Positions 530 to 55,422 of a DNA stretch of 64,000 nt are shown in pieces. Under the pieces are notes generated by a model. That model was given only the letters and a program-made list of their open reading frames with translations, did no database searches and had not been told where the DNA came from. The first letter of the stretch is position 1; every line of letters begins with the position of its first letter. The position numbers and the translations under genes were made by a program. Location: positions 62,001 through 126,000 of IMG/VR virus record IMGVR_UViG_3300027749_002876, one strand, 5' to 3'.

Positions 530-1732
530 ATGTCAACAGAAACAAAACTAAACCATTGCACATTTTGTGGTGCCCATAAAGAAAAAGTTAAAAAACTCAT
601 TGTCAGTGAAGAGGTGGCAATTTGCAGTGATTGCGTAGACCTATGCAATAAATTGATGATGGATGATAGCCATGAAAAAATAGAACCAACGGAACACAAT
701 GTATCCTACGATCCAGAGTCTATCAAAGAATTTTTAGACCAACACATCATAGGACAAGATAGTGCTAAGGGTGTGTTAAGTGTAGCAATTGCTAACCACT
801 ATAAACGAATCAACAAGCCACCAAAAGATTTAGAAATCTCTAAGGGTAATGTTTTGTTAGTAGGACCCACTGGATCAGGTAAAACATTGCTTGCTAAAAC
901 AGTAGCAAAATACTTAGAAGTCCCCTTTATTATAGCAGATGCTACAAGTATTACTGAAGCAGGTTATGTAGGTGATGATGTTGAATCAATGATTAGTATG
1001 CTAGTCAATGCCGCCGGCGGCGATCCTAGACTAGCAGAACGCGGTATTGTGTTTGTTGATGAGATTGACAAGATTGCTCGCAGAGGTGAGTCAGCAAGTG
1101 TTACACGTGATGTATCCGGTGAGGGTGTGCAACAAGCATTACTTAAATTAGTTGAAGGTACTATATGTCGTATTCCAGCAAGTGGTGGACGCAAACACCC
1201 CGGTGGTGATATGCTTGAGATTAATACAAAAGACATTCTGTTTATTGCAGGTGGTGCGTTTGTAGGATTAAAAGAAATTATCAACAACCGCGAGAATGGA
1301 ACAAGTATTGGCTTTGGTGCAGAGATTAAAGATAATCGCAAAGAGTCAGAATTGACAAATGTGTCGCCTGATGACTTAGTTAAATTTGGAATGATTCCTG
1401 AGTTTATTGGTCGTTTTACTACTACAGTAAGTGTGAGTGATTTAAATAAAGAAGAATTGATTAAGGTTCTTAAGGAAGTTAAGAACAACTATATCGACCA
1501 ATACAAATATTTGCTCAGTTTAGACAACATTGCAATAGACTTTAATGAAGATGCATTGGATCAACTAGCAGAGAATTGCTTAAAATTAAAGACAGGTGCT
1601 CGTGGATTACATACTGAAATTGAACGCACATTAATGCCACATATGTTTAACACTAAAAAGTACCGTGAAAACAATGTTACCGAGATAAATATAGACAGAG
1701 ATTTAGTTTTGGAGCCAAAATCATTAGCATGA
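530..1732 (+). CDS. clpX: ATP-dependent Clp protease ATP-binding subunit ClpX
   Basis: N-terminal C4 zinc finger (CTFCG...CSDC), Walker A GPTGSGKT, Walker B FVDEIDK, RDVSGEGVQQALLK, RKHP, IGF loop, TGARGL. Confidence 0.97.
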   Translation: MSTETKLNHCTFCGAHKEKVKKLIVSEEVAICSDCVDLCNKLMMDDSHEKIEPTEHNVSYDPESIKEFLDQHIIGQDSAKGVLSVAIANHYKRINKPPKDLEISKGNVLLVGPTGSGKTLLAKTVAKYLEVPFIIADATSITEAGYVGDDVESMISMLVNAAGGDPRLAERGIVFVDEIDKIARRGESASVTRDVSGEGVQQALLKLVEGTICRIPASGGRKHPGGDMLEINTKDILFIAGGAFVGLKEIINNRENGTSIGFGAEIKDNRKESELTNVSPDDLVKFGMIPEFIGRFTTTVSVSDLNKEELIKVLKEVKNNYIDQYKYLLSLDNIAIDFNEDALDQLAENCLKLKTGARGLHTEIERTLMPHMFNTKKYRENNVTEINIDRDLVLEPKSLA

Positions 1733-1944
1733 GTGGAAGAAAAGTATTAGTGCAAGACGGCAACACAGAAAAAGCATTACGGAAATTCAAAAAGAAGATT
1801 ACTGATTCTGGGTTACTGCAGGAAGTTAGGGATAGACAAGAATTTGTCAAGCCCACTATCCGTCGTAAACTTGCAAAAAGTCAGGCAAAAAGACGCTGGC
1901 AGAAATACTTGCGTGACCAAAGTCTTCCTAAGAAAGAATTTTAA
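1729..1944 (+). CDS. rpsU: 30S ribosomal protein bS21
   Basis: EKALRKFKKK...GLLQEVRDRQEFVKPT signature, basic 71 aa. Confidence 0.9.
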   Translation: MSGRKVLVQDGNTEKALRKFKKKITDSGLLQEVRDRQEFVKPTIRRKLAKSQAKRRWQKYLRDQSLPKKEF

Positions 1945-1983
1945 GTTCCAAAATAGTAGATTTTTTACGTGTTTTTAGTTATA

Positions 1984-2055
1984 ATAAATACGTGTGTAGA
2001 TGCTCATGGTGAGGTCTACTTATACAGTCATCTTGCTTAATAGGAGAAAAATATG
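1984..2055 (+). promoter_or_regulatory. Late-type promoter (ATAAATA) plus ROSE-like RNA thermometer 5'UTR of hsp20
   Basis: Hairpin 1995-2018, then UCUUGCU-uaau-AGGAGA pairing over the SD with a bulged G. Confidence 0.65.
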
Positions 2056-2502
2056 ACAAAAACTTTAACCCTTCGTTCCCTCGACATTCCACAACTTCAC
2101 AAATTTGGCATCGGTTTTGATAACATGTTTGATGAAATTTTACGTGTGAATGCACAACAATCCAACAACAACTATCCACCATATAACATCGTTCAAATTA
2201 ATGAAGATGAATATACGATTAGTATTGCTGTTGCAGGCTTCAGCCAAGACGAGCTATCTATTACTAAAGAGAAAAATATCTTAGTAATTGAGGGCAAACA
2301 TGCTGATACTATTGAGGAAGAAGAAATTAACTATCTACATAAAGGTATTAGCGAACGCAATTTCCGTCGTGAGTTTCGACTTGCCGAACATGTGGTGGGA
2401 ATCTATTCTACATTAGAATTGGGTATTCTAAACATTCATTTAAAACGTGAGGTTCCTGAAGAACAAAAACCCATGACTATTGCTATTAATTACATTAAGT
2501 AA
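2053..2502 (+). CDS. Small heat-shock protein Hsp20 (IbpA-like)
   Basis: IGFD, YPPYNI, IAVAGF, YLHKGI..RNF.REF, GILNI.L. Confidence 0.95.
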   Translation: MTKTLTLRSLDIPQLHKFGIGFDNMFDEILRVNAQQSNNNYPPYNIVQINEDEYTISIAVAGFSQDELSITKEKNILVIEGKHADTIEEEEINYLHKGISERNFRREFRLAEHVVGIYSTLELGILNIHLKREVPEEQKPMTIAINYIK

Positions 2503-2567
2503 TATAATAGAAGTTAGTTAAATACAAGTGTGCGGGGTAACTCGCACACATTTAAAAAAGAAAAATT

Positions 2568-2873
2568 ATGTCCAAATCAGATACAAAAGTCAAGATTAAA
2601 CCAATAGTTAACTTGGTAGAACCTCCTCTTTATAAAATCATTTATATCAATGACACGGTTACAAGCATGAACTTTGTGGTTAACAGCCTGATTGGCTATT
2701 TTAATTACAATGAAGATACAGCTACTTCATTGACTCACAATATACATAACGAGGGTAGTGCAGTCGTTGCAGTTCTTCCATATGAAATTGCTGAACAAAA
2801 GGGAATTGAGGTTACACTAGATGCACGAAGCCAAGGATTTCCACTACAAGTCAAAGTAGAAGCAGAGGCTTAA
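2568..2873 (+). CDS. clpS: Clp protease adaptor ClpS
   Basis: EPPLYKIIYIND.T.M.FV...IH.EGSAVV...YEIAEQK...GFPL. Confidence 0.9.
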   Translation: MSKSDTKVKIKPIVNLVEPPLYKIIYINDTVTSMNFVVNSLIGYFNYNEDTATSLTHNIHNEGSAVVAVLPYEIAEQKGIEVTLDARSQGFPLQVKVEAEA

Positions 2874-3571
2874 ACCTCTATATCTATTCGTTTGGGCCAA
2901 TAAGGTTCTTTACCAAAACAAGAATTGTTGACATAATTAATATTATCTATTGTTGTGTCAACACTCTTATCATAACTCCCGTATACCCAATTACTTACTT
3001 TGCTTTCAGTATCGCTAAGTAGTGTATCTTTTAGCGCAAAATATTCTGTTATATTATGCGGTTCTTCTCCAAAAAATAATTCTGGACTTGGGGCTGAATG
3101 TGTTACTACTAAAATCTTTTTCACATCCAAATGTAGTTGAAGTTTTGCTAAACTAAGTCCTAAATACTGAATATCTTCTAGGTGCTGGGCATGTAGATGC
3201 ATTTTTTCTAAGTCTGAAGTTAATTCTATCTTATTTACATACCATCCATTACAACCTAGTATTGCAACACCATTAATGATAACCACATATTTATGCAGGA
3301 AAGAAACTTTAGGGATAGTTTTGCACAATCTAGTTAATTCATCATTTCGGTGTTTTACAAAGTGCATAGATTCGTATTCAGACGATCCTGCAATGTAGAA
3401 CACACCTTGATAGAATCTACTAAGATGAAGTAGCGTTTGATGTATGATCCTCAATTCGTTGCTGATATTGCCGGCTATCACTAGATATAAACTGGTAGCC
3501 TTACCTTCCCAATCAAAGTGGTCCTCAGCGTCCAAATTAAGGTCGCTGATTACATCAAACCCTATATTCAT
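2870..3571 (-). CDS. Calcineurin-like metallophosphoesterase (degenerate metal ligands)
   Basis: ISDL, IAGN, YIAGS.EY, VVTHSAP, WVYG; several canonical His/Asp residues replaced. Confidence 0.7.
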   Translation of the reverse strand: MNIGFDVISDLNLDAEDHFDWEGKATSLYLVIAGNISNELRIIHQTLLHLSRFYQGVFYIAGSSEYESMHFVKHRNDELTRLCKTIPKVSFLHKYVVIINGVAILGCNGWYVNKIELTSDLEKMHLHAQHLEDIQYLGLSLAKLQLHLDVKKILVVTHSAPSPELFFGEEPHNITEYFALKDTLLSDTESKVSNWVYGSYDKSVDTTIDNINYVNNSCFGKEPYWPKRIDIEV

Positions 3572-3885
3572 TAAGCTTGTGGCTTAGCTTTTGGCTTAGC
3601 CGGAGCTTTTGCTTTAGCCGGAGCTTTTGCTTTAGCCGGAGCTTTTGCTTTAGCTGAAGTTTTTGTAGCTATTGTGGCTTCTGTTCCCAATGGGATCACT
3701 TCTACTACAGGAGCAACTTCTTCCACTTTTACAGGCTCAGCGACTACGGGTGTTGTTGAAACAGGTAATTCAACTTTGTACGGAACTTCTTCAATTGTTG
3801 ATTCTGCTTGTTTACGTTTTTGATTAACGCTATAGATCCAATAACCTACTAAACCTAAAATGATTGCTACTAAAATAATTTCCAT
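3571..3885 (-). CDS. Membrane-anchored protein with Lys/Ala/Pro-rich C-terminal repeats
   Basis: N-terminal hydrophobic helix; (AKAKAP)n tail. Confidence 0.7.
   Translation of the reverse strand: MEIILVAIILGLVGYWIYSVNQKRKQAESTIEEVPYKVELPVSTTPVVAEPVKVEEVAPVVEVIPLGTEATIATKTSAKAKAPAKAKAPAKAKAPAKPKAKPQA
3599..3654. repeat. 18-bp tandem repeat x3 (GCCGGAGCTTTTGCTTTA)
   Basis: Seen directly; encodes the KAKAPA repeats. Confidence 0.9.
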
Positions 3886-3966
3886 TTTTATCTCCTAAAC
3901 ATATATTTAATCGGGTAAGATACCTAAAGTTTTTTTCCTGAAAAGTGTGTAGTTTCCATAATAACA

Positions 3967-4476
3967 ATGTATCATAAATACATGATGTTCAGAACCACTA
4001 CTATCGCCAATCTTATGCTTGAGGAATTGCCACCAATTACCTATCAAAAACGGCTTTATTATAGGACCGATCATGGTGAGGTAGTAGTATTATACAAGAT
4101 GTTAAATAAATTAATTTTCAACAATAAATTAATAATGCCCGAGATTGAAGTAATGCCTCGTTGTAGAAAGTATTGGGGAATGTGTTTTGCAACCATAAAC
4201 ATGCCCACCAAGACTGAGAGTTTTTGCAAGATCAGGTTGATGGATAAATGGTATTGCAAACAATGGCTCATCACAGTGTTAGCACATGAAATGTGTCATC
4301 AATATCAATGGGATGTACAAGGGGTGCAAAGACTTAATGAGGGTAAACAACCTATTATGAGTCATGGCCCTAGTTTCTTTGTGTTTAGAGATAAGTTAGC
4401 AAAGCATGGTATTTCACTAAAAAGCGCACATAGTCGTAGACGCTGGTTCAAACATCAAAACTTATTTAAGTGTTAA
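3967..4476 (+). CDS. SprT-like zinc metalloprotease (true start probably 3981/3984)
   Basis: LNKLIFNN.L, LAHEMCHQYQ (HExxH), SHGPSF. Confidence 0.85.
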   Translation: MYHKYMMFRTTTIANLMLEELPPITYQKRLYYRTDHGEVVVLYKMLNKLIFNNKLIMPEIEVMPRCRKYWGMCFATINMPTKTESFCKIRLMDKWYCKQWLITVLAHEMCHQYQWDVQGVQRLNEGKQPIMSHGPSFFVFRDKLAKHGISLKSAHSRRRWFKHQNLFKC

Positions 4477-4505
4477 TTCTGATAAATACTATATAGGTAT
4501 ATATT

Positions 4506-5930
4506 ATGAGAGCACACCAATTTTTAACTGAAGCACCACTTACCCCCGGAAGTTTGTTTGACCCCCGTCACTTAAAGTGGAGACCACAAAACTTTCTTAA
4601 AAAGTTAGAAGCAGGTACGCCATTTGTTGACAAAGATGGTGTTAAGTATTATCCGGACGATGGAGAATTTTCAAGAATTACTCCTATTGTTACTCAAACA
4701 CTAAAACAACTTGCAACACAACCCAACGCACCTTTACCAAGCATTGTAATCAATACTACTGATGCAGGACCGGTGCCAGTAAGTAAATTTCAAAAGGCTG
4801 ACTTAGAAACAGAAAAGGGTAAAAAGTCAAGTGAGGTTAATGTTCAACCATTGGGCATTGGCATTGCGGCTGATCCTATCAACAAACCGGGTACAAAGCC
4901 AAAAGACAAAATAACAATGACAACTGACGAAGAAATTAAAACTGCGTTGGACAAACATCAAGAAATTAAAGCAGGTAACTTGTATGATGTTATCATGTCA
5001 AATAAAACACTTGACTCTGCAGGTTTATTAGGCAAAGCAATTAAACAGGCTGCAACTGAAATGAATAATAGCCAAGTACCTGTTATTAAACAATACGATG
5101 AAGCTATGCAAAGAAAGATTGCTATTGATGCCGGTGAGTATTTAGGTGTGCTGGCAATGGTTAAAGATGTTGCTGAATTCCCTAAGAAGGCCGCCTTCTT
5201 AAATTTTTTGCGCTCACCTGATTTTGGTAATTTATCTCTTATTTTCCCCGGTGAACAGAATTCACCACTAGGCGATAGTTACGGAGTTCAAAATGCAGAA
5301 ACTGGCCACAACATTATTATCAGTAGTAAAGGTGGTAAAGGTAGTACTGCTTCAGGTGCGGCACCTAGTCTAGGTGGATTGCGTACATCTGTTGACAAGC
5401 GTAAAACAAAAATTAAAAAAGGCAATGCACTTGATTTCATAAATCACATTATTCAAGTTAGCCCAACATCGGCACAAGGTTTTGCTGGTATGAATTGGAT
5501 TGCAAATAATTATCCAGAAGCTGTACCAGAAAAGTATAGAAAATTAATTCCCTTTTACAGTGAAGATATTAAGGCAGTTTTGAAAAATATTCGTACTAAG
5601 AATGCAGAACCAATGCCCAAAAAATTCTTACCATTAATACAAGCACCAAGTATCCAAGCAAGTAAAGGTACTGATGGTGGTAAATTGGTATATGTAGTAA
5701 CCAAAGATTTGGTAGACGCTATTAATACCGGTATCATTAAAAACTTTAGAACAACTGTATTAGAATTACTAGATGAAAACTTTGTACAAATATTCTCACG
5801 CATTGTAGGTGGCAAACTAACTACCAAGGTATTGTGGCCTGGTAAAGTAGACGGCAATGTAGTATTACATACAAAAATTGCACCCGGTGAACCCGGTAAA
5901 GCTGGCTTGAGTTTTAAGGTTACCGATTAA
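4506..5930 (+). CDS. Late hypothetical protein, possibly head-packaged
   Basis: 474-aa ORF after GATAAATA; MRAHQFLTE N-terminus. Confidence 0.7.
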   Translation: MRAHQFLTEAPLTPGSLFDPRHLKWRPQNFLKKLEAGTPFVDKDGVKYYPDDGEFSRITPIVTQTLKQLATQPNAPLPSIVINTTDAGPVPVSKFQKADLETEKGKKSSEVNVQPLGIGIAADPINKPGTKPKDKITMTTDEEIKTALDKHQEIKAGNLYDVIMSNKTLDSAGLLGKAIKQAATEMNNSQVPVIKQYDEAMQRKIAIDAGEYLGVLAMVKDVAEFPKKAAFLNFLRSPDFGNLSLIFPGEQNSPLGDSYGVQNAETGHNIIISSKGGKGSTASGAAPSLGGLRTSVDKRKTKIKKGNALDFINHIIQVSPTSAQGFAGMNWIANNYPEAVPEKYRKLIPFYSEDIKAVLKNIRTKNAEPMPKKFLPLIQAPSIQASKGTDGGKLVYVVTKDLVDAINTGIIKNFRTTVLELLDENFVQIFSRIVGGKLTTKVLWPGKVDGNVVLHTKIAPGEPGKAGLSFKVTD

Positions 5931-5942
5931 TACCAAAATCAT

Positions 5943-5971
5943 TTGACTTCAACACAGACTTCTGATATAAT
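5943..5971 (+). promoter_or_regulatory. Sigma70-type promoter for clpP
   Basis: TTGACT-17-TATAAT. Confidence 0.75.
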
Positions 5972-5999
5972 AGTGTAAACATTTTTATAAAGGAAGTTT

Positions 6000-6587
6000 A
6001 TGAGTCTAGTCCCAATGGTAATCGAGCAAACCGCTAAAGGTGAGCGTAGTTACGATATATACAGCCGTCTATTGCGCGACCGTGTTATTTTGCTAGAAGG
6101 CGAAGTACATGATCAAATGGCCAATCTTATTGTTGCCCAACTCTTGTTCTTAGAGTCTGAAGGTGACAAAGATATATCAATGTACATCAATAGTCCCGGT
6201 GGTTCAGTTACAGCAGGTATGGCAATCTATGATTGTATGCAGTTCATTGCTCCCGACATTCACACTATTGTTATGGGTCAAGCATGTTCAATGGGTAGCT
6301 TACTTGCACAAGCAGGTGCTAAAGATAAACGATTTATGTTGCCAAACGCACGACATATGATTCATCAACCTTCTGGTGGCGCCCGTGGTCAAGCAACTGA
6401 TATGTTGATTCAAGTGGAAGAAATGCTGGCAATGAAAAAGAACCTCACACAAATCTATGTTAACCACAACAGTGCAGGCAAGACATTCGAACAACTAACT
6501 GCTGATATGGAACGTGATAACTTTATGTCTGCACAACAAGCATTAGCATATGGTCTAATCGACAAAATCATCGATAAACGCAGTTAA
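6000..6587 (+). CDS. clpP: ATP-dependent Clp protease proteolytic subunit
   Basis: LVPMVIEQ...[18 protein letters not shown], catalytic ACSMG / MIHQP / ERDNF. Confidence 0.98.
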
Positions 6588-10983: not shown

Positions 10984-11035
10984 CAATAAATCGTTTTGGG
11001 CTTATAATAGAATCTTAAACAGTAAAGAAAAGGAC
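10980..11035 (+). promoter_or_regulatory. Early promoter cassette
   Basis: TTGACAATAAAT...TATAATAGAATCTTAAACAGTAAAGAAAAGGA. Confidence 0.9.
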
Positions 11036-11040
11036 TAGAA

Positions 11041-11313
11041 ATGACACAAGTTTATGATCGTTTGACAGAGCAGGAAAAACGTGAAGTTCGTATGTATGGC
11101 GTTACCGAAGCAGGTATGCGTGAATCTATAGAACAAAGTATTACTTTTAAATTCTCAGGTCCTGCAATGATCGCCGCTAGCCTGATGAGTGACGCCCAGG
11201 AAATGATTAATCCTGAATACGGTGATGTTGACTATATGCGAGCCGAGGATGCCCGTCAATGTCTGAATCGTGCCAAATGGGTTCTCTTTGAATATGTCAT
11301 GTCCAAAACTTGA
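11041..11313 (+). CDS. Early hypothetical protein
   Basis: Promoter and SD upstream; stop codon lies in the next -35. Confidence 0.75.
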   Translation: MTQVYDRLTEQEKREVRMYGVTEAGMRESIEQSITFKFSGPAMIAASLMSDAQEMINPEYGDVDYMRAEDARQCLNRAKWVLFEYVMSKT

Positions 11314-11365
11314 CAATAAATAGGTATTCTGCTATAATAGAATCTTAGACAGTCAAACAAAGGAT
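11310..11365 (+). promoter_or_regulatory. Early promoter cassette
   Basis: TTGACAATAAAT...TATAATAGAATCTTAGACAG...AAGGA. Confidence 0.9.
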
Positions 11366-11370
11366 ACAAA

Positions 11371-11538
11371 ATGCAAATCGCAACAGCAATCAAAGTAATA
11401 CAAAAAGATGCAGAATTCTTGGGTATGGGTTTCTTGGAAATGATGCAGTTTATTCAAAAAGACCCATTAGCACAAACACACAAAACATTAGAAGCATACA
11501 ATGTAATTAAGTTTGCAGGTGCTAAGTTTTTTGCCTAA
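11371..11538 (+). CDS. Early hypothetical protein, 55 aa (MQIATAIKVIQKDAEFLG...), not in the ORF track
   Basis: AAGGA SD; fills the gap between two promoters. Confidence 0.75.
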   Translation: MQIATAIKVIQKDAEFLGMGFLEMMQFIQKDPLAQTHKTLEAYNVIKFAGAKFFA

Positions 11539-11540
11539 AT

Positions 11541-11593
11541 TTGACAATAAATCAAATTGGGTATATAATAGAGTCTTATTCAATCAAAAGGAA
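11541..11593 (+). promoter_or_regulatory. Early promoter cassette
   Basis: TTGACAATAAAT...TATAATAGAGTCTT. Confidence 0.9.
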
Positions 11594-11598
11594 ACAAA

Positions 11599-11946
11599 AT
11601 GTTAGTAGTCCATAAATTTCTCAAAACCGATGGCAAGGGTTACTGGTCACAAGTTGTTAGATCCGTTAAAGTTACAGGTTTTGACCTGGACTACGTGAAT
11701 GAAGAAGGTGACTTTGGTGAGTTGCGTGTATACTTTGATACTAAGTATTGGGACGTTAACAGTATGGGCCTGATCTATACTGACAAACAATTCCTGAAAG
11801 AATTGAAAACACTGTTGGCCGAACAACATCTCGGTACTGACGTTTCATATTCCGAGCAAGGTATGCAAGGTGATACTTTTGTATCACTGGATTGCGGATC
11901 CGAATTCATCAAATCTTTCCAAAATTTGCTTACAGTGGAACTGTGA
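11599..11946 (+). CDS. Early hypothetical protein
   Basis: SD and promoter upstream. Confidence 0.75.
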   Translation: MLVVHKFLKTDGKGYWSQVVRSVKVTGFDLDYVNEEGDFGELRVYFDTKYWDVNSMGLIYTDKQFLKELKTLLAEQHLGTDVSYSEQGMQGDTFVSLDCGSEFIKSFQNLLTVEL

Positions 11947-11959
11947 AAGGTAATACTAA

Positions 11960-12181
11960 ATGACTAAATTTGAAAACCTCCAGGAACTATTGTCTTTGCT
12001 CAACGAAGCGCAGGATTTGATTGAAGAAATTTACGGTGATGCAGACGAGGCTTTTGACATGTCCATCAACCTTAGTAATGTCATCTCCGATGTAGAGGTT
12101 GAGATAGATTTTGAGGACATTAAACTTGACCAAAATTTGACAATAAATGGTGTTCCTGTTATAATAGAATCTAGACAATAA
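11960..12181 (+). CDS. Acidic hypothetical protein whose 3' end reads through the next promoter
   Basis: AAGGT SD; Asp/Glu-rich. Confidence 0.65.
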   Translation: MTKFENLQELLSLLNEAQDLIEEIYGDADEAFDMSINLSNVISDVEVEIDFEDIKLDQNLTINGVPVIIESRQ

Positions 12182-12190
12182 AGAAAAGGA
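12137..12190 (+). promoter_or_regulatory. Early promoter cassette
   Basis: TTGACAATAAAT...TATAATAGAATCT. Confidence 0.88.
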
Positions 12191-12196
12191 CTCAAA

Positions 12197-12469
12197 ATGC
12201 GTACAAAAACTATCATTGACGGCTTCAATAACTCACAAAAATTCCGTGTAATTTTTAAGGGTGACGGAAGCGAAAACGATATCGGTATGTACTTGACTAT
12301 CAAGCAAATGTCCGAGCAATTTGCTACAGTTAACGCCCGCACACTTTGCTGGGATGCTATGCTTAAATTGTCTTATTTGCGTTATGAAGCCAAGCGCAAA
12401 AATGAGACAGTTCCGACAGGTCTCGGTGACACATTTAGGGGCAAACAAGTCCAAGTTGACTTGGTATAA
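12197..12469 (+). CDS. Early hypothetical protein
   Basis: AAGGA SD. Confidence 0.75.
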   Translation: MRTKTIIDGFNNSQKFRVIFKGDGSENDIGMYLTIKQMSEQFATVNARTLCWDAMLKLSYLRYEAKRKNETVPTGLGDTFRGKQVQVDLV

Positions 12470-12528
12470 AAGGTTGACAATAAATCACTTTGGGTATATA
12501 ATAGAATCTTAAACAGTAAAGAAACGGA
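12468..12528 (+). repeat. ~60-bp promoter direct repeat, identical to 12814-12874
   Basis: AAAAGGTTGACAATAAATCACTTTGGGTATATAATAGAATCTTAAACAGTAAAGAAACGGA present twice. Confidence 0.95.
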
Positions 12529-12534
12529 GTTAAT

Positions 12535-12810
12535 ATGAAAAAATCACTAATTGCAACATTGTTATTAGTATCAGGAATTGCTCATGCTGGAATTGAGCAG
12601 CCGCTTCAACAAGCAATTAACCAAGTAGGATCATCATGTGATAAGGTAACTCAAGTTTTTCAGAGTAGCGGGACATATAATATGTACAGTGTTGCATGTT
12701 CCGGTGGACAAACATATATGGTTCTAGTTAAACCTGAAACTAATTCAGCTAAGGTTATGACATGCCGAGAAATGGCAATGATTGGTACAAAGTGTTTTGT
12801 CAAATTGTAA
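12535..12810 (+). CDS. Small secreted protein with four Cys
   Basis: Signal peptide ending in AHA; flanked by the identical repeats. Confidence 0.75.
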   Translation: MKKSLIATLLLVSGIAHAGIEQPLQQAINQVGSSCDKVTQVFQSSGTYNMYSVACSGGQTYMVLVKPETNSAKVMTCREMAMIGTKCFVKL

Positions 12811-12813
12811 TTT

Positions 12814-12874
12814 AAAAGGTTGACAATAAATCACTTTGGGTATATAATAGAATCTTAAACAGTAAAGAAACGGA
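12814..12874 (+). repeat. Second copy of the ~60-bp promoter repeat
   Basis: Identical to 12468-12528. Confidence 0.95.
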
Positions 12875-12881
12875 ACACAAA

Positions 12882-13364
12882 ATGGCAACTCGCTCAACAA
12901 TCGCTCTCGAATTCGCTGATGGTACTATTGGTCAAGTATATTGTCACTGGGATGGTTACTTGGCTCACAACGGTAAAATGTTGCAGGAGTATTATTCTAA
13001 CCCCTTTGTTTTGCGTGACTTGATTGACCTCGGTGGGTTGTCTGGCTTGCGCCCAACAATCGGTACAAAACATCCCTTCAGTATGTACGAAGCAAACATG
13101 ACACAGGATGAATACGCTAACCTGTATCGTGACATGTGTACATTCTATGGCCGTGATCGTGGCGAAGGCGAATCTGATGCAAATTACTTCAAGGACTTTG
13201 CAGACTTCAAAGACAATGGTCAAGCTGAAGAATACGATTACATCCTGCGTAACGTGAATGGCGTTGCTACTTGGTTCGTATCCGATCATGGTGGAGACTA
13301 CATGTTGTTGACTGAGGCATTTGCTAAAGAAGCCGAAGCAGAAAAAGAAGAATTGCCCTTATAA
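12882..13364 (+). CDS. Conserved phage hypothetical protein
   Basis: MATRS.I...VYCHWDGY, YGRDRGE, EEYDY motifs. Confidence 0.8.
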   Translation: MATRSTIALEFADGTIGQVYCHWDGYLAHNGKMLQEYYSNPFVLRDLIDLGGLSGLRPTIGTKHPFSMYEANMTQDEYANLYRDMCTFYGRDRGEGESDANYFKDFADFKDNGQAEEYDYILRNVNGVATWFVSDHGGDYMLLTEAFAKEAEAEKEELPL

Positions 13365-13373
13365 GGAATAATA

Positions 13374-13703
13374 ATGGAAGCAGTAGTAGAAACAACAGTT
13401 TGGAATGATAGCAACCTTGCTAATCATACATACTTATTTGACGGAATGAAAATGGTTGCGTACATCAAGGTTGGTTCTACTACACCATTCTATTTCAAAA
13501 AGCCTATCACAATCGACAAGCGCGGCCGTAAGTTTACACCAGTTAAGCCAAATCCCTTCAAGGAAGTGAAAGAAAAGAGTACAATCATCAAAGTGTCCGG
13601 TAGTAAAGGCAATGTCTATTCTATTGACACTGAAGCTAACACCTGCTCTTGTATGGGGTTTCAGTTTAGGGCAACCTGTAAACACATAATGGAGTTAGTA
13701 TGA
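13374..13703 (+). CDS. SWIM zinc-finger protein
   Basis: GSKGNVY...CSCMGFQFRATCKH. Confidence 0.8.
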   Translation: MEAVVETTVWNDSNLANHTYLFDGMKMVAYIKVGSTTPFYFKKPITIDKRGRKFTPVKPNPFKEVKEKSTIIKVSGSKGNVYSIDTEANTCSCMGFQFRATCKHIMELV

Positions 13704-29230: not shown

Positions 29231-29268
29231 TTTAGTCCTTTTCTGATAAATACAGAATAAGGACTAAA
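29231..29268 (+). promoter_or_regulatory. Late promoter in the loop of an SD-sequestering hairpin
   Basis: TTTAGTCCTTTTCTG-ATAAATA-CAGAA(T)AAGGACTAAA. Confidence 0.8.
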
Positions 29269-29269
29269 A

Positions 29270-30397
29270 ATGACTATAGGAAACTTAGAAGTAATCGATA
29301 TTGGCTTAGCCAACGAGTCTACGGGCAGTGATTCACTTTACTTAGCATTTAACAAAACAAAAAACAACTTTGCAGTATTAGCAAATACCGCCAGTCAGTA
29401 CGTCAATTTTACAGGAAATACTGGTATAGGAGTAAATGCTAACGCCACAACGGGCACAGTTTACATAACAAATACTGGTGTTAACAGTTTAACTGCAGGA
29501 GATAGCAGTATTATTTTAACAGAACCTACCCCGGGTAATATATCAATTGTTGCTTCAGGTGTGGGTAACGGCGGTAGTGGTACAGTAACTAGTGTAGGAG
29601 TTACTTCGTCTACACTGACTATTAGTAATAGCCCTATTGTTAGTTCCGGAAATATTACATTAAATCTAACATCAATAAGTCCCACACTTGCAGGGACATA
29701 TACATACCCAACCGTAACAGTTGATCAATTTGGTAGGGTTACTACAATAGCAAACGCCGCTAGTGTAGGTACTGTAACTAGCGTAGGCATTGCCCCAGGG
29801 GCAGGTATTTCTGTTACAAATAGCCCTATTACTGCATCCGGAGACATTACAGTAATTAATACGGGTGTCACAAGAGTTAGTGCAGGATCAGGAATTCAAG
29901 TAAGTAGTGGTAATGGCAATGTTACTATTTCAACAACCCCGGTGGCGGCTGTTACTTCAGTGTCACTAGCAAGTTCGTCATTAACAGTAACCGGTAGTCC
30001 AATTACAGGATCGGGAACAATCACAGTTGAGTTACCTAGTGCAATAACTATTGCAGGTAATCTAACTGCAGGTAATATTTTATCAAATGGTAGAATGGTA
30101 CTCAATGGTAGTGAAGATTTGGCAGCATCGGCAGCGGCAAATCTATTAGTTACAGCAAGTTATTTCACAACAGTATCCGCTGAGACAGCTACATTGGCAG
30201 CCGGAGTTGACGGTCAAATTAAAACTTTTATGATGGTTGCTGACGGTGGTGATATGGTTATCACTGTCGCTAATGCAGGTTGGAAAAGTTCGGGTACAGG
30301 AACTATAACATTCAATGACATGGGTGATGGTTGCACTCTACAATATATTACAAACAAATGGTTTTGCGTTGGCAACAATGGAGTAACTTTTGCATAA
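29270..30397 (+). CDS. Virion structural/fibre-like protein
   Basis: IDIG.....GSDSL..AF.K.. N-terminus; repeated GTVTSV...SPI..SG.I; TVDQFGRVT. Confidence 0.7.
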   Translation: MTIGNLEVIDIGLANESTGSDSLYLAFNKTKNNFAVLANTASQYVNFTGNTGIGVNANATTGTVYITNTGVNSLTAGDSSIILTEPTPGNISIVASGVGNGGSGTVTSVGVTSSTLTISNSPIVSSGNITLNLTSISPTLAGTYTYPTVTVDQFGRVTTIANAASVGTVTSVGIAPGAGISVTNSPITASGDITVINTGVTRVSAGSGIQVSSGNGNVTISTTPVAAVTSVSLASSSLTVTGSPITGSGTITVELPSAITIAGNLTAGNILSNGRMVLNGSEDLAASAAANLLVTASYFTTVSAETATLAAGVDGQIKTFMMVADGGDMVITVANAGWKSSGTGTITFNDMGDGCTLQYITNKWFCVGNNGVTFA

Positions 30398-53292: not shown

Positions 53293-53368
53293 TGGCATCC
53301 CGGGTAAGCCTCGAACTTACAACCCCTGGTTTTGGAGACCAGTGCTCTGCCAATTGAGCTACCGAGAT
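53293..53368 (-). tRNA. tRNA-Trp(CCA)
   Basis: Cloverleaf, encoded CCA end. Confidence 0.93.
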
Positions 53369-53375
53369 ATATTCT

Positions 53376-53597
53376 TTATGCGTTTTTTCTAATACGCTTG
53401 AGGTATTCTCTACCCACAAGTCCTGCTTCAATTTCTTGAAGTGCAGTCACAATAGGACCTGCTTTAGAGACTAGTGTAGAACGATGTCCACGCTTTAACT
53501 CTCTTACTCTATGTGAAGCGATAAGAACTAAATCAAATCGATTACCAACCATATTAACGGCGTCTTCACTTGTATATCTTGCTCTGCTTTCAGTCAT
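53376..53597 (-). CDS. rpoZ: RNA polymerase omega subunit
   Basis: AR.T.EDA...VGNRFDLVLIAS.R.REL...TAL.EI..G. Confidence 0.9.
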   Translation of the reverse strand: MTESRARYTSEDAVNMVGNRFDLVLIASHRVRELKRGHRSTLVSKAGPIVTALQEIEAGLVGREYLKRIRKNA

Positions 53598-53608
53598 TTT
53601 CTTCCTTT

Positions 53609-54208
53609 TTAAAATTCAAACATTAATCTTTTCATTGTCTCAAAATAAATTTTAGGTCTTAATGCTAATGCAGGCCTTAATGTTAATACAACTCTTTCAT
53701 TATCTGATTGTGAATTATCCCAATCGTGAAATATTTCGGTATTAAACAATATTGCTTCATTGGGCTGAGCCACCATTGATTTAACCGGGGAGTGTTTAGT
53801 TTTATCAAATCCAACACATTCCCTTGATCCATTATGTTTAGGATCGATTTCATACATAGATAAATCTTCATCACTATACCAGCTGGTCACACACTTATCA
53901 TCTAATATTTTAGAAGTATAATTTATACTAACATGGTCAAATGATCCGTCTTTATGAGCCCTATATGTCATATGCGGCTTTGATATGAATAACGATACCC
54001 GATCAATTTCTAATGGTGGAAATTTTAAGGGAATCATACTCAGCATTTTTTTAGATTCATCTGGCTGTAATTTATAATGAGTAAAATCTTCATTTATCTT
54101 ATAAATATCCGGGGTGATTACATTGCAATAATCTATTATAGACTGTATACCGGCGTGAGTATATCTAATATAATAAGGACTACAATCTTCAATGATTTCG
54201 TATTTCAT
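53609..54208 (-). CDS. Fe(II)/2OG oxygenase- or cupin-like protein
   Basis: AHKD...LFNT...H...N...R..L..R. Confidence 0.6.
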   Translation of the reverse strand: MKYEIIEDCSPYYIRYTHAGIQSIIDYCNVITPDIYKINEDFTHYKLQPDESKKMLSMIPLKFPPLEIDRVSLFISKPHMTYRAHKDGSFDHVSINYTSKILDDKCVTSWYSDEDLSMYEIDPKHNGSRECVGFDKTKHSPVKSMVAQPNEAILFNTEIFHDWDNSQSDNERVVLTLRPALALRPKIYFETMKRLMFEF

Positions 54209-54210
54209 GC

Positions 54211-54864
54211 TTACTCTAAAAATAATAGGTTGTTATTTTTAAATACATCTCTCCAGTATCCTGTGTTAGGTATCAGAGCCCATAATTTAGTATTTTCAAA
54301 AACTATCAATGTTCTATTTTTTTTTGTTTGATTTAATGCGACCGCAACCCCATTAAACCAGGGATGAAAATCATCTCCTAGTAATAATCCGGTATCGGAT
54401 TCATACTTTTCAATATCATGTTTAACATCCAATAATGTATGTGAAGCATCAATAAAGGTAAGATCGTAATGTTTTACTTTCTCAAAATCTTTGCTAGAAG
54501 TAGGGTGTACATTTATATTAGCATACATTTCTTCACCTATACAAAATCTAAATGCATCATGCCATCCTGTAGCTTTTGCAATTTCTCTTGCATCAGCATA
54601 CATAATAGGATCGCCTAGTGCAAATTGCAAATTTTCAAACTCAATATTTAATAATGATTGGCTAGAAACAATTCTAAAATTATCAACTATATCCATGCTT
54701 ACAGAAGAATTTTTACCTCTATAGAGGGCAGTAGTAGAACTACCCAAAAAACAACCTATTTCTAAAATAGAACCATTATCAGGAACATAACCAGCCAATG
54801 TTGAAAGAATTATTAATTCTTTTTCGAGCATCCAACCCGGAATGTTTACATTGTATTTTTGCAT
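54211..54864 (-). CDS. Class I SAM methyltransferase
   Basis: PGWM, LEIGC..GSST, FIDASH, GDD. Confidence 0.85.
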   Translation of the reverse strand: MQKYNVNIPGWMLEKELIILSTLAGYVPDNGSILEIGCFLGSSTTALYRGKNSSVSMDIVDNFRIVSSQSLLNIEFENLQFALGDPIMYADAREIAKATGWHDAFRFCIGEEMYANINVHPTSSKDFEKVKHYDLTFIDASHTLLDVKHDIEKYESDTGLLLGDDFHPWFNGVAVALNQTKKNRTLIVFENTKLWALIPNTGYWRDVFKNNNLLFLE

Positions 54865-54884
54865 ATTGTATTTATGTTTATATT

Positions 54885-54960
54885 TGGAGCGGGAAATCGG
54901 GTTCGAACCGACGACATTCACGTTGGCAACGTGATGCTCTACCAACTGAGCTATTCCCGC
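54885..54960 (-). tRNA. tRNA-Gly(GCC)
   Basis: Cloverleaf. Confidence 0.95.
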
Positions 54961-54967
54961 ATATTCT

Positions 54968-55042
54968 TGGTACATCGACACGGTTTCGAACCGCGGACCC
55001 TCTCCGTGTAAAGGAGACGCTCTACCCCTGAGCTATCGATGC
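54968..55042 (-). tRNA. tRNA-Val(TAC)
   Basis: Cloverleaf. Confidence 0.95.
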
Positions 55043-55052
55043 ATATTTTTAT

Positions 55053-55232
55053 TTAACCCCCTTGAGAGCTGTCTTTAACTTCTGTTTCTCTAGCAATTTT
55101 TTCAAACGCTTCATCTTCATTCTTTTGATCCTCAATCATTCTTGGATCAGGCTTACGAAAGATTTTGTCATAGTTGTTTGCATATTCTTGTTGACTGACA
55201 CTGTATGGTCTTGGACTAGAACCTTTGCTCAC
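55053..55232 (-). CDS. Small protein, 59 aa (MSKGSSPRPYSVSQQEY...DKIF), GTG start, not in the ORF track
   Basis: GTGA overlap with the upstream ORF. Confidence 0.6.
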   Translation of the reverse strand: MSKGSSPRPYSVSQQEYANNYDKIFRKPDPRMIEDQKNEDEAFEKIARETEVKDSSQGG

Positions 55233-55399: not shown

Positions 55400-55422
55400 A
55401 CTATCTTCCTTTGTTAAAAACT

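What the first reader, a model, noticed from the sequence alone, without database searches (positions are those of the whole stretch)
1984..2055. ROSE-like RNA thermometer on the phage small heat-shock gene
Seen: ATAAATA late-type promoter, a first hairpin (GTAGA..CTCA-TGG-TGAG..TCTAC), then UCUUGCU pairing with AGGAGA with an unpaired G opposite the SD. Established: bacterial ROSE elements control sHsp translation through a U(U/C)GCU motif paired to the SD. Inference: the phage gates Hsp20 by both infection stage and temperature.
Basis: partly seen in the sequence, partly recalled or inferred. Interest (0 to 1): 0.6.

Follow-up and report, generated by a model that had tools for sequence, protein, structure and literature searches.

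The report
ROSE-type leader on phage hsp20
The untranslated leader of a giant lake phage's small heat-shock gene is a two-hairpin relative of the bacterial ROSE RNA thermometers, and the same leader sits in front of hsp20, dnaK and groES genes in hundreds of other phages, so phages probably sense temperature or protein damage to time chaperone synthesis.

Summary
Folding this one sequence is not convincing: z is -0.8 and the minimum-energy fold uses another register. No Rfam ROSE model hits this copy. The comparative evidence is strong. The window lies in a 524-kb phage genome that carries the leader three times (hsp20, dnaK, a second hsp20). About 250 distinct leaders from other viral contigs and seven cultured phages keep the same plan. 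In hairpin 1 all ten pairs covary. U(U/C)GCU lies before the SD in 54 of 57 leaders collected without reference to it. Two lineages show compensatory changes in the SD helix. Paralogues and relatives score 25-34 bits against Rfam ROSE_3 (cut-off 43), whose consensus shares GAUGCC..GGGUC and the bulged G. ATAAATA is a T4-type late promoter here: it precedes structural genes, and the genome encodes a gp55-like sigma factor. Temperature sensing itself is inferred, not shown. Repression by the sHsp, as with E. coli IbpA, is a live rival or partner. I rate this a new member of a known kind. Its wide spread in phages appears unreported in the open-access papers and preprints I searched.

The parts
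1953..1972 (+). Upstream promoter box ATAGTAGATTTTTTACGTGT. It is shared with the dnaK promoter of the same genome and with one subgroup of relatives.
   Evidence: TTTT(A/G)CGT(A/G)T followed 8-16 nt later by ATAAATA occurs only twice in the 524-kb genome, before hsp20-1 and before dnaK. The box is conserved in relatives L005, L009, L011, L017, L021, L027, L051, L064 and others. Its function was not tested.
1980..1990 (+). TATAATAAATA: a T4-type late promoter element (NATAAATA, 1984-1990) overlapping a TATAAT. No -35 hexamer is present.
   Evidence: - ATAAATA occurs 209 times in the genome, 128 of them in the 8.5% that is intergenic. It mostly ends 10-30 nt before start codons.
- It precedes tail sheath, baseplate wedge, tail-fibre and virion structural genes.
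- A gp55-like late sigma factor is encoded in the genome.
- The sigma-70 scan finds no promoter here.
- NATAAATA is the late promoter of T4-like cyanophages (PMC2984593).
1996..2019 (+). Hairpin 1: a 10-bp stem with U2001.G2014, bulged G2002 and loop UGG 2007-2009. It can optionally extend by pairing 1992-1995 with 2022-2025. It is the 5'-terminal structural hairpin of the leader.
   Evidence: - It forms in the minimum-energy fold at 15-45 C.
- On the MAFFT alignment A2, 100% of cells are paired and 6 of 10 pairs change on both sides. RNAalifold predicts it independently.
- Over 75 distinct diverse leaders, all 10 pairs change on both sides.
- It matches hairpin I of the Rfam ROSE_3 consensus, CGgGAUGCCGAAg.CGGGUCcCG.
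2027..2031 (+). GUCAU, the 5' arm of the outer helix of hairpin 2. It pairs with AUGAC 2053-2057, which holds the start codon.
   Evidence: - It is in the minimum-energy fold of both paralogues at all temperatures tried, and RNAalifold predicts it.
- It is conserved in the window's clade. Relatives that lose the last U (GUCAA, GUCAC, GUC) all read AUGACU instead of AUGACA, which extends the helix at its base.
- It is not a family-wide feature: over 232 leaders the best complementary run averages 3.76 against 3.79 with shuffled partners.
2032..2037 (+). Anti-SD CUUGCU, the ROSE motif U(U/C)GCU, with G2035 unpaired. U2031 can add a sixth pair with A2047 in place of its outer-helix pair.
   Evidence: - It is invariant or changed compatibly in relatives: UUUGCU in L008 and L044, and UCGCU in the marine clades.
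- It is present in 54 of 57 leaders collected using only the top of hairpin 1 plus AGGAG.
- Compensatory changes occur in the S-TIM5 clade and in L240.
- It aligns to ACUcGCu of ROSE_3.
2038..2041 (+). Loop UAAU of hairpin 2.
   Evidence: Its length varies from 3 to 11 nt (mode 6) across 248 distinct leaders, while both flanks stay fixed. That is the behaviour of a loop.
2042..2047 (+). Shine-Dalgarno AGGAGA, the 3' arm of the inner helix of hairpin 2.
   Evidence: The sequence is. Only about 55 of 563 crude gene calls in this genome have a full AGGAG.
2053..2502 (+). hsp20, encoding a 149-aa IbpA-like small heat-shock protein. Its first five bases, AUGAC, form the 3' arm of the outer helix.
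   Evidence: - Pfam HSP20, 6e-17.
- 49% identical to Salmonella IbpA, with the residues that IbpA needs for mRNA binding conserved: Y41, R102 and R106 correspond to IbpA Y34, R93 and R97 (PMC10474464).
- Lake metatranscriptome contigs lie on the gene and its leader.

Best explanation
The roughly 57-62-nt leader of this phage hsp20 mRNA is a short, two-hairpin ROSE-type translational control element. It descends from the leaders of proteobacterial ibpA/hspA genes.

Transcription starts from a T4-type late promoter (ATAAATA, 1984-1990) a few bases before hairpin 1. Hairpin 1 (1996-2019) is a stable 5' clamp that does not melt. Hairpin 2 is the sensor. CUUGCU (2032-2037) pairs imperfectly with the SD AGGAG (2042-2046), leaving G2035 bulged. 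In this clade GUCAU (2027-2031) also pairs with AUGAC (2053-2057), so both the ribosome-binding site and the start codon are occluded.

The structure is only marginally stable. It should be closed in cold lake water and open progressively as temperature rises, so that 30S subunits can bind and Hsp20 is made. dnaK and the second hsp20 of the same genome carry their own copies of the leader and would respond together.

Shown here: the elements, their conservation, covariation in hairpin 1, compensatory changes in the SD helix, the kinship to ROSE_3, and the class of the promoter. Inferred: the transcription start site, melting with temperature, and the effect on translation.
For: - **Conservation in close relatives.** 299 IMG/VR relatives of the protein were found. 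Of the 80 loci fetched, 79 keep promoter, hairpin 1, linker, GUCAU, CUUGCUUA, a variable loop, AGGAGA and AUGAC. The one that lacks them has the gene abutting another ORF.
- **Hairpin 1 covaries.** All 10 pairs change on both sides across 75 distinct leaders. 96% of cells are paired, against 40-54% when the 3' partners are slid by 1-3 columns. The same holds on a MAFFT alignment that was not fitted to any model.
- **The motif marks chaperone genes.** CTTGCTTA-N0-8-AGGAGAAA gave 81 matches in viral contigs. 71 lie before Hsp20 genes, 3 before DnaK and 1 before GroES, and about 3 are chance.
- **The motif appears without being selected for.** Among leaders collected only by the top of hairpin 1 plus AGGAG, 54 of 57 have U(U/C)GCU. 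None of the 23 chance hits does.
- **Changes in the SD helix keep the ROSE register.** U.G alternates with C-G (UUGCU/UCGCU, 167 against 81 leaders). The S-TIM5 clade has CCACGCUU facing AAGGUGG, a switch from U-A to A-U. L240 has AUCGCU facing AGGAU where its relative L238 has CUCGCU facing AGGAG, a switch from C-G to A-U. Both switches break the alternative register that RNAalifold prefers.
- **Kinship to ROSE_3.** ROSE_3 scores 34.1 bits on the leader of phage Melnitz, 27.7 on the genome's own hsp20-2 and 24.8 on its own dnaK. Its consensus has the same hairpin I and the same bulged G. In return, my phage model hits a Pseudomonas leader that ROSE_3 scores at 58.3 bits.
- **Bacterial homologues carry the motif.** 70 of the 80 nearest bacterial loci have U(U/C)GCU before the SD.
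- **Stability is in the sensing range.** Hairpin 2 is worth -6.5 kcal/mol at 20 C, -2.9 at 37 C and -1.2 at 45 C.
- **The leader is unusually long.** It measures 62 nt from promoter motif to ATG, against 10-30 nt for other late genes.
- **The leader is in RNA-derived contigs.** Contigs from four lake metatranscriptomes cover it upstream of UUGCU. The flanking clpX has no coverage, and S21 and clpS almost none.
Against: - No Rfam ROSE model matches this copy, even at E<=10.
- The nearest-neighbour model does not choose the ROSE register.
- That model predicts no temperature-driven opening of the SD. The mean unpaired probability is 0.36 at 25 C and 0.38 at 45 C. The gene ranks 67th of 230 for SD occlusion in this genome.
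- The inner helix is only 5-6 bp long.
- The SD helix is almost invariant, so direct covariation rests on two lineages plus wobble changes. The optional sixth pair is mismatched in many leaders.
- One exact RNA-library contig begins at 1983, upstream of the expected start. This means read-through, carried-over DNA or a different start site.
- The host is unknown. One relative sits in a Bacteroidota MAG. Ribosomes of that phylum make little use of the SD (cited in PMC9723584).
- No experiment exists for any phage copy.
Confidence: 0.65

Rival explanations
1. The leader is mainly an operator for the phage sHsp itself. Free Hsp20 oligomers bind the structured leader and repress translation of hsp20, and of dnaK and groES where they carry the leader. 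Misfolded proteins titrate Hsp20 away and release translation. On this view the element senses aggregation rather than temperature, as shown for E. coli IbpA. This can coexist with thermosensing.
For: - E. coli and Vibrio IbpA repress their own translation by binding the ROSE-type ibpA leader. This needs R93, a cationic residue at position 97 and an aromatic residue at position 34 (PMC10474464; bioRxiv 10.1101/2020.04.20.050740).
- The phage protein keeps all three as R102, R106 and Y41, and R102 is conserved in at least 90% of 32 diverse phage Hsp20s.
- One shared leader on hsp20, dnaK and groES fits a common trans-acting regulator.
- A phage late in infection faces a flood of assembling proteins. 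That is a proteostasis signal, not a heat signal.
Against: - The arginine is conserved in most sHsps for structural reasons, so its presence is weak evidence.
- K98 of IbpA is E107 in the phage protein.
- No binding data exist, and binding could not be tested with these tools.
- The compensatory changes in the SD helix show that pairing is under selection. Both models need that pairing.
Confidence: 0.3
2. The leader no longer regulates anything. Hairpin 1 is a 5' stabiliser against RNase attack, AGGAGA is simply a strong SD, and the conserved CUUGCUUA is an inherited relic or a translation enhancer.
For: - 5'-terminal hairpins stabilise mRNAs (established knowledge, for example ompA).
- The nearest-neighbour model predicts only partial, temperature-insensitive occlusion of the SD.
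- clpS, the next gene, also has a promoter followed by a hairpin.
Against: - A relic would not stay invariant across leaders whose proteins are only 25-70% identical while the linker and loop change freely.
- A relic would not show compensatory changes with the SD.
- A relic would not have been copied onto dnaK and groES.
- None of the 53 other AGGAG-SD genes of this genome has the motif.
Confidence: 0.08
3. Hairpin 1 is the terminator or a processing site of the upstream gene (bS21 here, dnaK at the second copy) and is not part of the hsp20 leader.
For: At the second copy the hairpin follows the dnaK stop codon directly, with no promoter motif between them.
Against: - No U-tract follows the hairpin, and the terminator scan does not call it.
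- In the window and in most relatives the promoter motif lies upstream of the hairpin, so the hairpin is transcribed with hsp20.
- The hairpin is homologous to hairpin I of ROSE_3.
- RNA-library contigs run through it into the gene.
Confidence: 0.05

Closest known systems
Short ROSE-like RNA thermometers of Pseudomonas ibpA (Rfam ROSE_3, RF02523; Krajewski et al. 2013, PMC3669281)
   Same: - Two hairpins in a leader of about 60 nt before an IbpA-type sHsp gene.
- A GC-rich hairpin I with the GAUGCC..GGGUC core, a U.G pair and a bulged G.
- A hairpin II in which U(U/C)GCU faces the SD with a bulged G.
- The two models recognise each other's members. ROSE_3 gives 24.8-34.1 bits on phage leaders. 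The phage model gives 21.7 bits on a Pseudomonas leader that ROSE_3 scores at 58.3 bits.
   Different: - It is carried by phages, not bacteria.
- It is driven by a T4-type late promoter, not sigma-32.
- The inner helix is shorter: 5-6 bp, without the flanking G-C clamps and the GA/UC extension of the Pseudomonas elements.
- The loop is A/U-rich and varies in length.
- In this clade the start codon is paired, whereas it is free in Pseudomonas.
- The window copy scores below any reportable ROSE_3 threshold.
- The leader also occurs on dnaK and groES.
Classical ROSE elements (Rfam ROSE RF00435, rhizobial hspA; ROSE_2 RF01832, enterobacterial ibpA)
   Same: - The same U(U/C)GCU:SD pairing with a bulged G.
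- The same gene family downstream. The 80 nearest bacterial loci are almost all alpha- and gamma-proteobacterial, and 70 of them carry the motif.
- The start codon is occluded, as in rhizobial ROSE.
   Different: - The classical elements have three or four hairpins and are 70-120 nt long.
- ROSE (RF00435) gives no hit to any phage copy even at E<=10. ROSE_2 gives none at the thresholds searched (E<=10 for the window copy, E<=1 for the other phage loci).
- As a control, Salmonella ibpA scores 94.9 bits on ROSE_2.
Synechocystis hsp17 RNA thermometer (PMC4477652)
   Same: A single sensing hairpin in which an internal loop separates a lower stem holding the AUG from an upper stem holding the SD. 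This is the layout of hairpin 2 here, with GUCAU:AUGAC below and CUUGCU:AGGAG above.
   Different: hsp17 has no U(U/C)GCU motif, no bulged G and no 5' hairpin I. The two are not homologous in sequence.
Phage lambda cIII RNA thermometer
   Same: It is a phage-encoded mRNA element whose structure sets translation according to temperature (my own knowledge; not tested here).
   Different: It works by switching between two alternative structures and is on at low temperature. It is unrelated in sequence, structure and regulated gene.
IbpA autoregulation through the ibpA leader (PMC10474464)
   Same: A ROSE-type leader before an IbpA-like gene, with the RNA-binding residues of IbpA conserved in the phage protein.
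   Different: Binding of the phage protein to its leader is untested. In the phages the leader also occurs on dnaK and groES.

Membership tests
ROSE-like RNA thermometer | Lies in the 5' UTR of a small heat-shock (alpha-crystallin) gene | tested here: met
   The leader at 1991-2052 directly precedes a Pfam HSP20 protein (6e-17) that is 49% identical to Salmonella IbpA.
ROSE-like RNA thermometer | A U(U/C)GCU motif faces the SD in the 3'-proximal hairpin | tested here: met
   - CUUGCU 2032-2037 faces AGGAG 2042-2046.
- The motif is present in 54 of 57 leaders collected without selecting for it.
- Compensatory changes occur in two lineages.
- Caveat: the nearest-neighbour minimum-energy fold prefers another register.
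ROSE-like RNA thermometer | An unpaired (bulged) G opposite the SD | tested here: met
   G2035 has no partner in the ROSE register. It aligns to the unpaired G of the ROSE_3 consensus structure in the paralogues. The non-canonical geometry seen by NMR in ROSE cannot be tested here.
ROSE-like RNA thermometer | One to three additional 5' hairpins upstream of the SD hairpin | tested here: met
   Hairpin 1 at 1996-2019 covaries at all 10 pairs across the family. It is homologous to hairpin I of ROSE_3.
ROSE-like RNA thermometer | Scores at or above the gathering cut-off of an Rfam ROSE model (RF00435, RF01832, RF02523) | tested here: not met
   - The window copy has no hit at the gathering score or at E<=10.
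- The genome's own paralogues score 27.7 and 24.8 bits on ROSE_3, and relatives up to 34.1, against a cut-off of 43.
- The criterion is operational and insensitive. Only 1 of 20 bacterial ibpA-like loci scanned passes any ROSE cut-off, although 70 of the 80 bacterial loci fetched carry the U(U/C)GCU-SD motif. Salmonella ibpA itself scores 23.9 bits on ROSE_3.
ROSE-like RNA thermometer | The SD hairpin melts with temperature, and translation rises with it | not testable with these tools
   Only nearest-neighbour energies are available. Hairpin 2 goes from -6.5 kcal/mol at 20 C to -1.2 at 45 C, but the ensemble accessibility of the SD is flat. Reporter, probing and toeprint experiments are needed.
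T4-type late promoter | A (N/T)ATAAATA element without a -35 hexamer, a few bases before the transcript start | tested here: met
   AATAAATA is at 1983-1990. The sigma-70 scan finds no -35. The motif is 7-fold enriched in intergenic DNA and lies 10-30 nt before start codons. Some relatives add TTGACA 17 bp upstream, which makes overlapping early and late promoters (PMC2984593).
T4-type late promoter | Used for virion structural genes and read by a gp55-type sigma factor | tested here: met
   The motif precedes tail sheath, baseplate wedge, tail-fibre and virion structural genes. A sigma factor for late transcription is encoded at about G000 341.2-342.1 kb (phrog_12791, 1e-72; weak direct match to T4 gp55, E 4e-5).
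T4-type late promoter | Transcript 5' end mapped just downstream of the motif, with late timing | tested here: inconclusive
   The only RNA data are Logan contigs of lake metatranscriptomes. They cover the leader and the gene, but contigs cannot show 5' ends, and one exact contig begins at 1983. The extra upstream box shared only with dnaK may mean this is a special promoter sub-class.

The most novel reading that the evidence does not exclude
The leader is the cis-element of a phage-encoded proteostasis regulon that spans many phage lineages: jumbo lake phages, T4-like cyanophages such as Syn9 and S-TIM5, SAR11 and Methylophilales phages, and Sinorhizobium phage Phosso. One ROSE-derived leader, captured with a proteobacterial ibpA gene, has been copied onto phage dnaK and groES. 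It integrates temperature with feedback from the phage sHsp, which binds the leader and is titrated away by misfolded virion proteins. Chaperone output late in infection would then track folding load. ROSE control of dnaK or groES is not among the described ROSE targets in the papers I read or in my own knowledge.
Probability: 0.3. Interest if true: 0.8.

Novelty: new member of a known kind. Interest (0 to 1): 0.6.

Why it matters
RNA thermometers are regarded as bacterial devices. The textbook phage example is the unrelated lambda cIII switch. Here a ROSE-type leader is a conserved, selected part of the hsp20 genes of hundreds of uncultured phages and of well-studied cultured ones (Syn9, S-TIM5, Melnitz, Mosig, HTVC115P, Phosso), and it has spread to phage dnaK and groES.

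If it senses temperature, the phage itself adjusts chaperone supply to water temperature. That bears on how infection success of abundant marine and lake phages changes with warming, and on why hsp20 is so common in T4-like cyanophages.

The element is about 60 nt long and portable, and cultured phage-host pairs exist, so the idea can be tested directly.

The work also shows that the Rfam ROSE models miss most real ROSE-like leaders, bacterial ones included. A broader model is warranted.

Full-text searches for RNA thermometer with phage and hsp20, and for cyanophage with hsp20 and thermometer, found no prior description. The library holds only open-access papers and preprints, so this is not proof that none exists.

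Tried and rejected
- **Rfam on the window copy.** All 4227 families at the gathering score, and at E<=10 on 1900-2120, gave only chance-level preQ1-II and HIV_FE hits. RF00435 and RF02523 over the whole genome did not report the window copy.
- **Single-sequence thermodynamics.** z is -0.8, the minimum-energy fold uses a different inner register, and SD accessibility is neither unusual for this genome nor dependent on temperature. I treat these results as uninformative rather than negative. ROSE helices rely on non-canonical pairs that the energy model does not describe.
- **Family-wide start-codon helix.** Rejected. There is no enrichment over shuffled partners in 232 leaders, so the helix is specific to this clade.
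- **T4 MotA box.** CTTGCTTA resembles the middle-promoter box (a/t)(a/t)TGCTT(t/c)A (my own knowledge). Rejected, because a -10 element about 12 bp downstream would start transcription inside the gene, after the ATG.
- **Sigma-70 promoter or intrinsic terminator at the site.** Neither was found.
- **More SD variants.** The pattern returned only AGGAG leaders and added nothing.
- **Bacterial search with a 32-sequence Hsp20 alignment.** I repeated it with 10 sequences.
- **Phage megablast of 6.6 kb.** No near relative exists among the deposited phage genomes.
- **Host assignment.** Not achieved. The nearest bacterial Hsp20s are proteobacterial at up to 46% identity. The two closer hits (50% and 57%) are MAG contigs that carry the phage-type leader and are probably phage DNA binned into MAGs.
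Full report
**What is there**

The window is bases 62,001-126,000 of a 524,565-bp IMG/VR virus record that CheckV rates complete. It is a tailed jumbo phage. It encodes tail sheath, baseplate and virion proteins, and the window alone holds 25 tRNA genes.

The finding sits in a proteostasis gene cluster:

| Gene | Window coordinates |
|---|---|
| clpX | 530-1732 |
| ribosomal protein bS21 | 1729-1944 |
| hsp20 | 2053-2502 |
| clpS | 2568-2873 |
| clpP | 6000-6587 |

| Element | Coordinates |
|---|---|
| TATAAT, overlapping ATAAATA | 1980-1985; 1984-1990 |
| Hairpin 1 (G2002 bulged, loop UGG) | 1996-2019 |
| UCUUGCU | 2031-2037 |
| Loop UAAU | 2038-2041 |
| SD AGGAGA | 2042-2047 |
| ATG | 2053 |

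Hairpin 2 can therefore cover the start codon as well as the SD.

**The single sequence is not enough**

- The leader does not fold better than shuffled sequence (z = -0.8). The minimum-energy fold keeps hairpin 1 and the GUCAU:AUGAC helix but uses a different 3-bp inner register.
- In the ROSE register, hairpin 2 is worth -6.5 kcal/mol at 20 C, -5.5 at 25 C, -2.9 at 37 C and -1.2 at 45 C. That is marginal, as expected of a thermometer, and just as expected of noise.
- The predicted ensemble accessibility of the SD is ordinary for this genome (rank 67 of 230) and flat with temperature.
- No Rfam family, ROSE or other, matches this copy above chance.

**Comparative evidence**

*Within the genome.* The genome holds a diverged duplicate of the hsp20-clpS-phosphoesterase segment, placed after a dnaK gene. 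Both dnaK and this second hsp20 have the leader. Each has a hairpin of unrelated sequence but the same shape, followed by CUUGCU, a short A/U loop and AGGAGA. These three are the only places in 524 kb where U(U/C)GCU lies 2-14 nt before an AGGAG SD of a called gene. None of the 53 other AGGAG-SD genes has it.

*Close relatives.* IMG/VR holds 299 relatives of the protein. Of the 80 loci fetched (66-100% identity), 79 keep the full plan. The exception has the gene abutting another ORF and retains only the SD.

*Diverse relatives.*
Of the 81 matches returned, 71 precede Hsp20 genes as little as 25% identical to this one, 3 precede DnaK, 1 precedes GroES, and about 3 are chance.
- A second pattern fixed only the top of hairpin 1 and AGGAG. 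It returned 57 true leaders, 54 of them with U(U/C)GCU, and 23 chance hits with none.
- In all I counted 248 distinct leaders in viral loci by the stricter filter: 220 before Hsp20 and 10 before DnaK. Loops are 3-11 nt long. The looser filter gave 232.
- Operons in which dnaK and hsp20 each carry their own leader recur in at least four contigs.

*Cultured phages.* Six of the seven I sampled have the standard leader: Melnitz, Mosig, Syn9, HTVC115P, C48C1 and Phosso. The seventh, S-TIM5, has it with a changed SD helix and a different hairpin 1.

**Structure support**

- Hairpin 1 is proven by covariation. On a MAFFT alignment of 23 relatives every cell pairs and six pairs change on both sides, and RNAalifold predicts the hairpin by itself. 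Over 75 distinct diverse leaders all ten pairs change on both sides, with 96% of cells paired against 40-54% when partners are slid. That second alignment was fitted to the model.
- The SD helix cannot covary freely because the SD is fixed by the ribosome. The changes that do occur fit the ROSE register:
  - U.G alternates with C-G (UUGCU in 167 leaders, UCGCU in 81).
  - C-G becomes U.G in L008 and L044.
  - The optional sixth pair is U-A in 105 leaders, C-G in 5 and A-U in 3, though it is mismatched in many others.
  - The S-TIM5 clade has CCACGCUU opposite AAGGUGG, a switch from U-A to A-U.
  - L240 has AUCGCU opposite AGGAU where its relative L238 has CUCGCU opposite AGGAG, a switch from C-G to A-U.
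- The last two are full compensatory switches. Both would break the alternative register that the energy model prefers.
- The start-codon helix is conserved in the window's clade. Loss of its top pair is accompanied by a synonymous ACA-to-ACU change that adds pairs at the bottom. It is not a property of the whole family.

**Kinship with ROSE**

- Controls work. Salmonella ibpA scores 94.9 bits on ROSE_2, and a Pseudomonas ibpA leader scores 58.3 bits on ROSE_3.
- ROSE_3 gives specific sub-threshold hits, against a cut-off of 43 bits:

| Leader | ROSE_3 bits |
|---|---|
| Phage Melnitz | 34.1 |
| Own hsp20-2 | 27.7 |
| Phage C48C1 | 26.8 |
| Own dnaK | 24.8 |
| L133 | 24.8 |

  Salmonella ibpA, a genuine ROSE element, scores only 23.9 bits on the same model.
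- The printed ROSE_3 consensus, ugCGgGAUGCCGAAg.CGGGUCcCG...ACUcGCuGA....UCaGgAG, has the same hairpin-I core (GAUGCC..GGGUC with a U.G pair and a bulged G) and the same anti-SD with an unpaired G as the phage leaders.
- My phage model in turn finds the Pseudomonas element.
- The nearest bacterial homologues of the protein are alpha- and gamma-proteobacterial IbpA-type genes at 36-46% identity. Of the 80 bacterial loci fetched, 70 carry U(U/C)GCU before the SD. Several also have the GAUGCC..GGGUC hairpin.
- Only 1 of 20 bacterial leaders scanned passes any Rfam ROSE cut-off. Failing those cut-offs therefore says little.
- I conclude that the gene was captured together with its ROSE leader. The leader was then trimmed to two hairpins, as in Pseudomonas (PMC3669281), and copied onto phage dnaK and groES.

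**Promoter**

The genome has two clear promoter classes.
- TTGACA-N17-TATAAT occurs 54 times, before small ORFs and clpP.
- (G/T)ATAAATA: the core ATAAATA occurs 209 times, 128 of them in the 8.5% of the genome that is intergenic. It usually ends 10-30 nt before a start codon. It precedes tail sheath, baseplate wedge, tail-fibre or decoration, and virion structural genes.

The genome encodes a sigma factor for late transcription (phrog_12791, 1e-72; weak direct match to T4 gp55). NATAAATA is the known late promoter of T4-like cyanophages (PMC2984593).

Two refinements apply.
- The hsp20 leader is unusually long for this class, at 62 nt.
- The hsp20-1 and dnaK promoters share an extra upstream box (TAGAWTTTTTTACGTRT) found nowhere else in the genome in that arrangement. 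Other relatives instead have a perfect TTGACA 17 bp upstream, which makes overlapping early and late promoters.

**RNA evidence**

- Contigs from four lake metatranscriptomes lie on hsp20 and its leader. The two exact ones span 1983-2067 and 2038-2179.
- Others come from relatives and from the second copy.
- clpX has no coverage, and bS21 and clpS almost none.
- This argues for an abundant hsp20 message that includes the UUGCU motif.
- Contigs cannot show 5' ends, and carried-over DNA cannot be excluded. A contig starting at 1983 is upstream of the expected start.

**Mechanism and rivals**

- Most likely (0.65): a ROSE-type switch in which hairpin 2 hides the SD and, in this clade, the AUG in the cold and opens on warming.
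- Serious rival or partner (0.3): repression by the sHsp itself, as shown for IbpA in E. coli and Vibrio (PMC10474464). The residues IbpA needs are conserved in the phage protein as Y41, R102 and R106. A single leader shared by hsp20, dnaK and groES would suit a common trans-acting sensor of folding load late in infection.
- Less likely: a purely stabilising leader (0.08) and a terminator role for hairpin 1 (0.05). Conservation, the compensatory changes and the lack of a U-tract argue against them.
- The host is unknown. One relative sits in a Bacteroidota MAG. Ribosomes of that phylum make little use of the SD, and the phage bS21 gene lies directly upstream. Phage bS21 has been proposed to retune initiation late in infection (PMC9723584). 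This is a caveat and a lead.

**Verdict**

Thermosensing is still to be shown.
- It is a new member of the ROSE-like kind.
- Full-text searches found no description of ROSE-like or other RNA thermometers on phage hsp20. The breadth of the family in phages and its extension to dnaK and groES therefore appear to be new.

Noticed in passing
window 29231-29268 (upstream of the gene at 29270-30397); also G000 217311-218108(-), 445374-447146(-), 236993-237241(-): Several late promoters (GATAAATA, here at 29245-29252) sit in the loop of a long inverted repeat, TTTAGTCCTT...AAGGACTAAA, whose 3' arm contains the SD. Read-through transcripts would hide the SD, while transcripts started at the late promoter would lack the 5' arm. 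This is the arrangement known for T4 genes e and soc (my own knowledge). It independently suggests that ATAAATA is a real start signal.
   Followed up: partly
window 1729-1944: A phage-encoded ribosomal protein bS21 (Pfam 5.7e-16; phrog_21469) lies directly upstream of the SD-dependent hsp20 leader and overlaps the end of clpX. Phage bS21 has been proposed to retune translation initiation late in infection of Bacteroidota (PMC9723584).
   Followed up: partly
window 530-6587, and G000 about 463.9-472 kb: There are two proteostasis islands. The first holds clpX, bS21, hsp20, clpS, a metallophosphoesterase and clpP. The second holds clpP, dnaK, hsp20, clpS and a metallophosphoesterase. The hsp20-clpS-phosphoesterase segment is duplicated, with about 75% DNA identity over the stretches that align.
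   Followed up: partly
window 2480-2549: Between hsp20 and clpS lies a sigma-70-like promoter (TTGCTA-17-TATAAT, 2480-2508) followed by the hairpin GTGTGCGGGGTAACTCGCACAC (2528-2549). Both are conserved in the paralogous copy. clpS therefore also has a promoter followed by a 5' hairpin, but no anti-SD motif.
   Followed up: no
window 1953-1972, and G000 about 471870-471890(-): The upstream box (A)TAG(N)AGAWTTTTTTACGTRT is shared only by the hsp20-1 and dnaK promoters of this genome and by one subgroup of relatives. It may be a site for a dedicated regulator of the chaperone genes.
   Followed up: partly
window 53296-63063 (-): Twenty-five tRNA genes lie in a 10-kb stretch on the minus strand.
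   Followed up: no
window about 11000-13400 (G000 73041-75364): A run of small ORFs (90-160 aa), each preceded by a nearly identical sigma-70-type promoter and leader cassette, TTGACAATAAAT..TATAATAGAATCTTAnACAGTAAAGAAA. The same cassette recurs elsewhere in the genome.
   Followed up: no
L294:4207-4401, L169:757-1011, L171:3364-3606: In some relatives the same leader precedes small ORFs of 65-85 aa of unknown function. In L294 the small ORF is followed directly by hsp20.
   Followed up: no
L126:1041-1459: A related viral contig carries a permuted (two-piece) tmRNA gene about 1 kb downstream of its hsp20 leader (Rfam tmRNA_permuted 119.7 bits).
   Followed up: no
L395 (NZ_JBBAKG010000031.1, 70-kb contig of a Haliscomenobacter MAG) and L396 (Pirellulales MAG, 6.9-kb contig): These contigs, filed under bacterial MAGs, carry the phage-type promoter, leader and hsp20 (L395 scores 63.6 bits on the phage model). 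They are probably phage DNA binned into MAGs. If the binning is instead meaningful, L395 hints at a Saprospiria host.
   Followed up: partly
hairpin 1 (window 2001-2014) compared with hairpin 2 (2033-2045): Both hairpins contain the same small motif: a U.G pair, then a bulged G, then a C-G pair (AUGCC/GGGU and UUGCU/AGGA). The ROSE_3 consensus has the same motif in both hairpins. Whether the repeat has a meaning, for example as a common protein-binding feature, is open.
   Followed up: no
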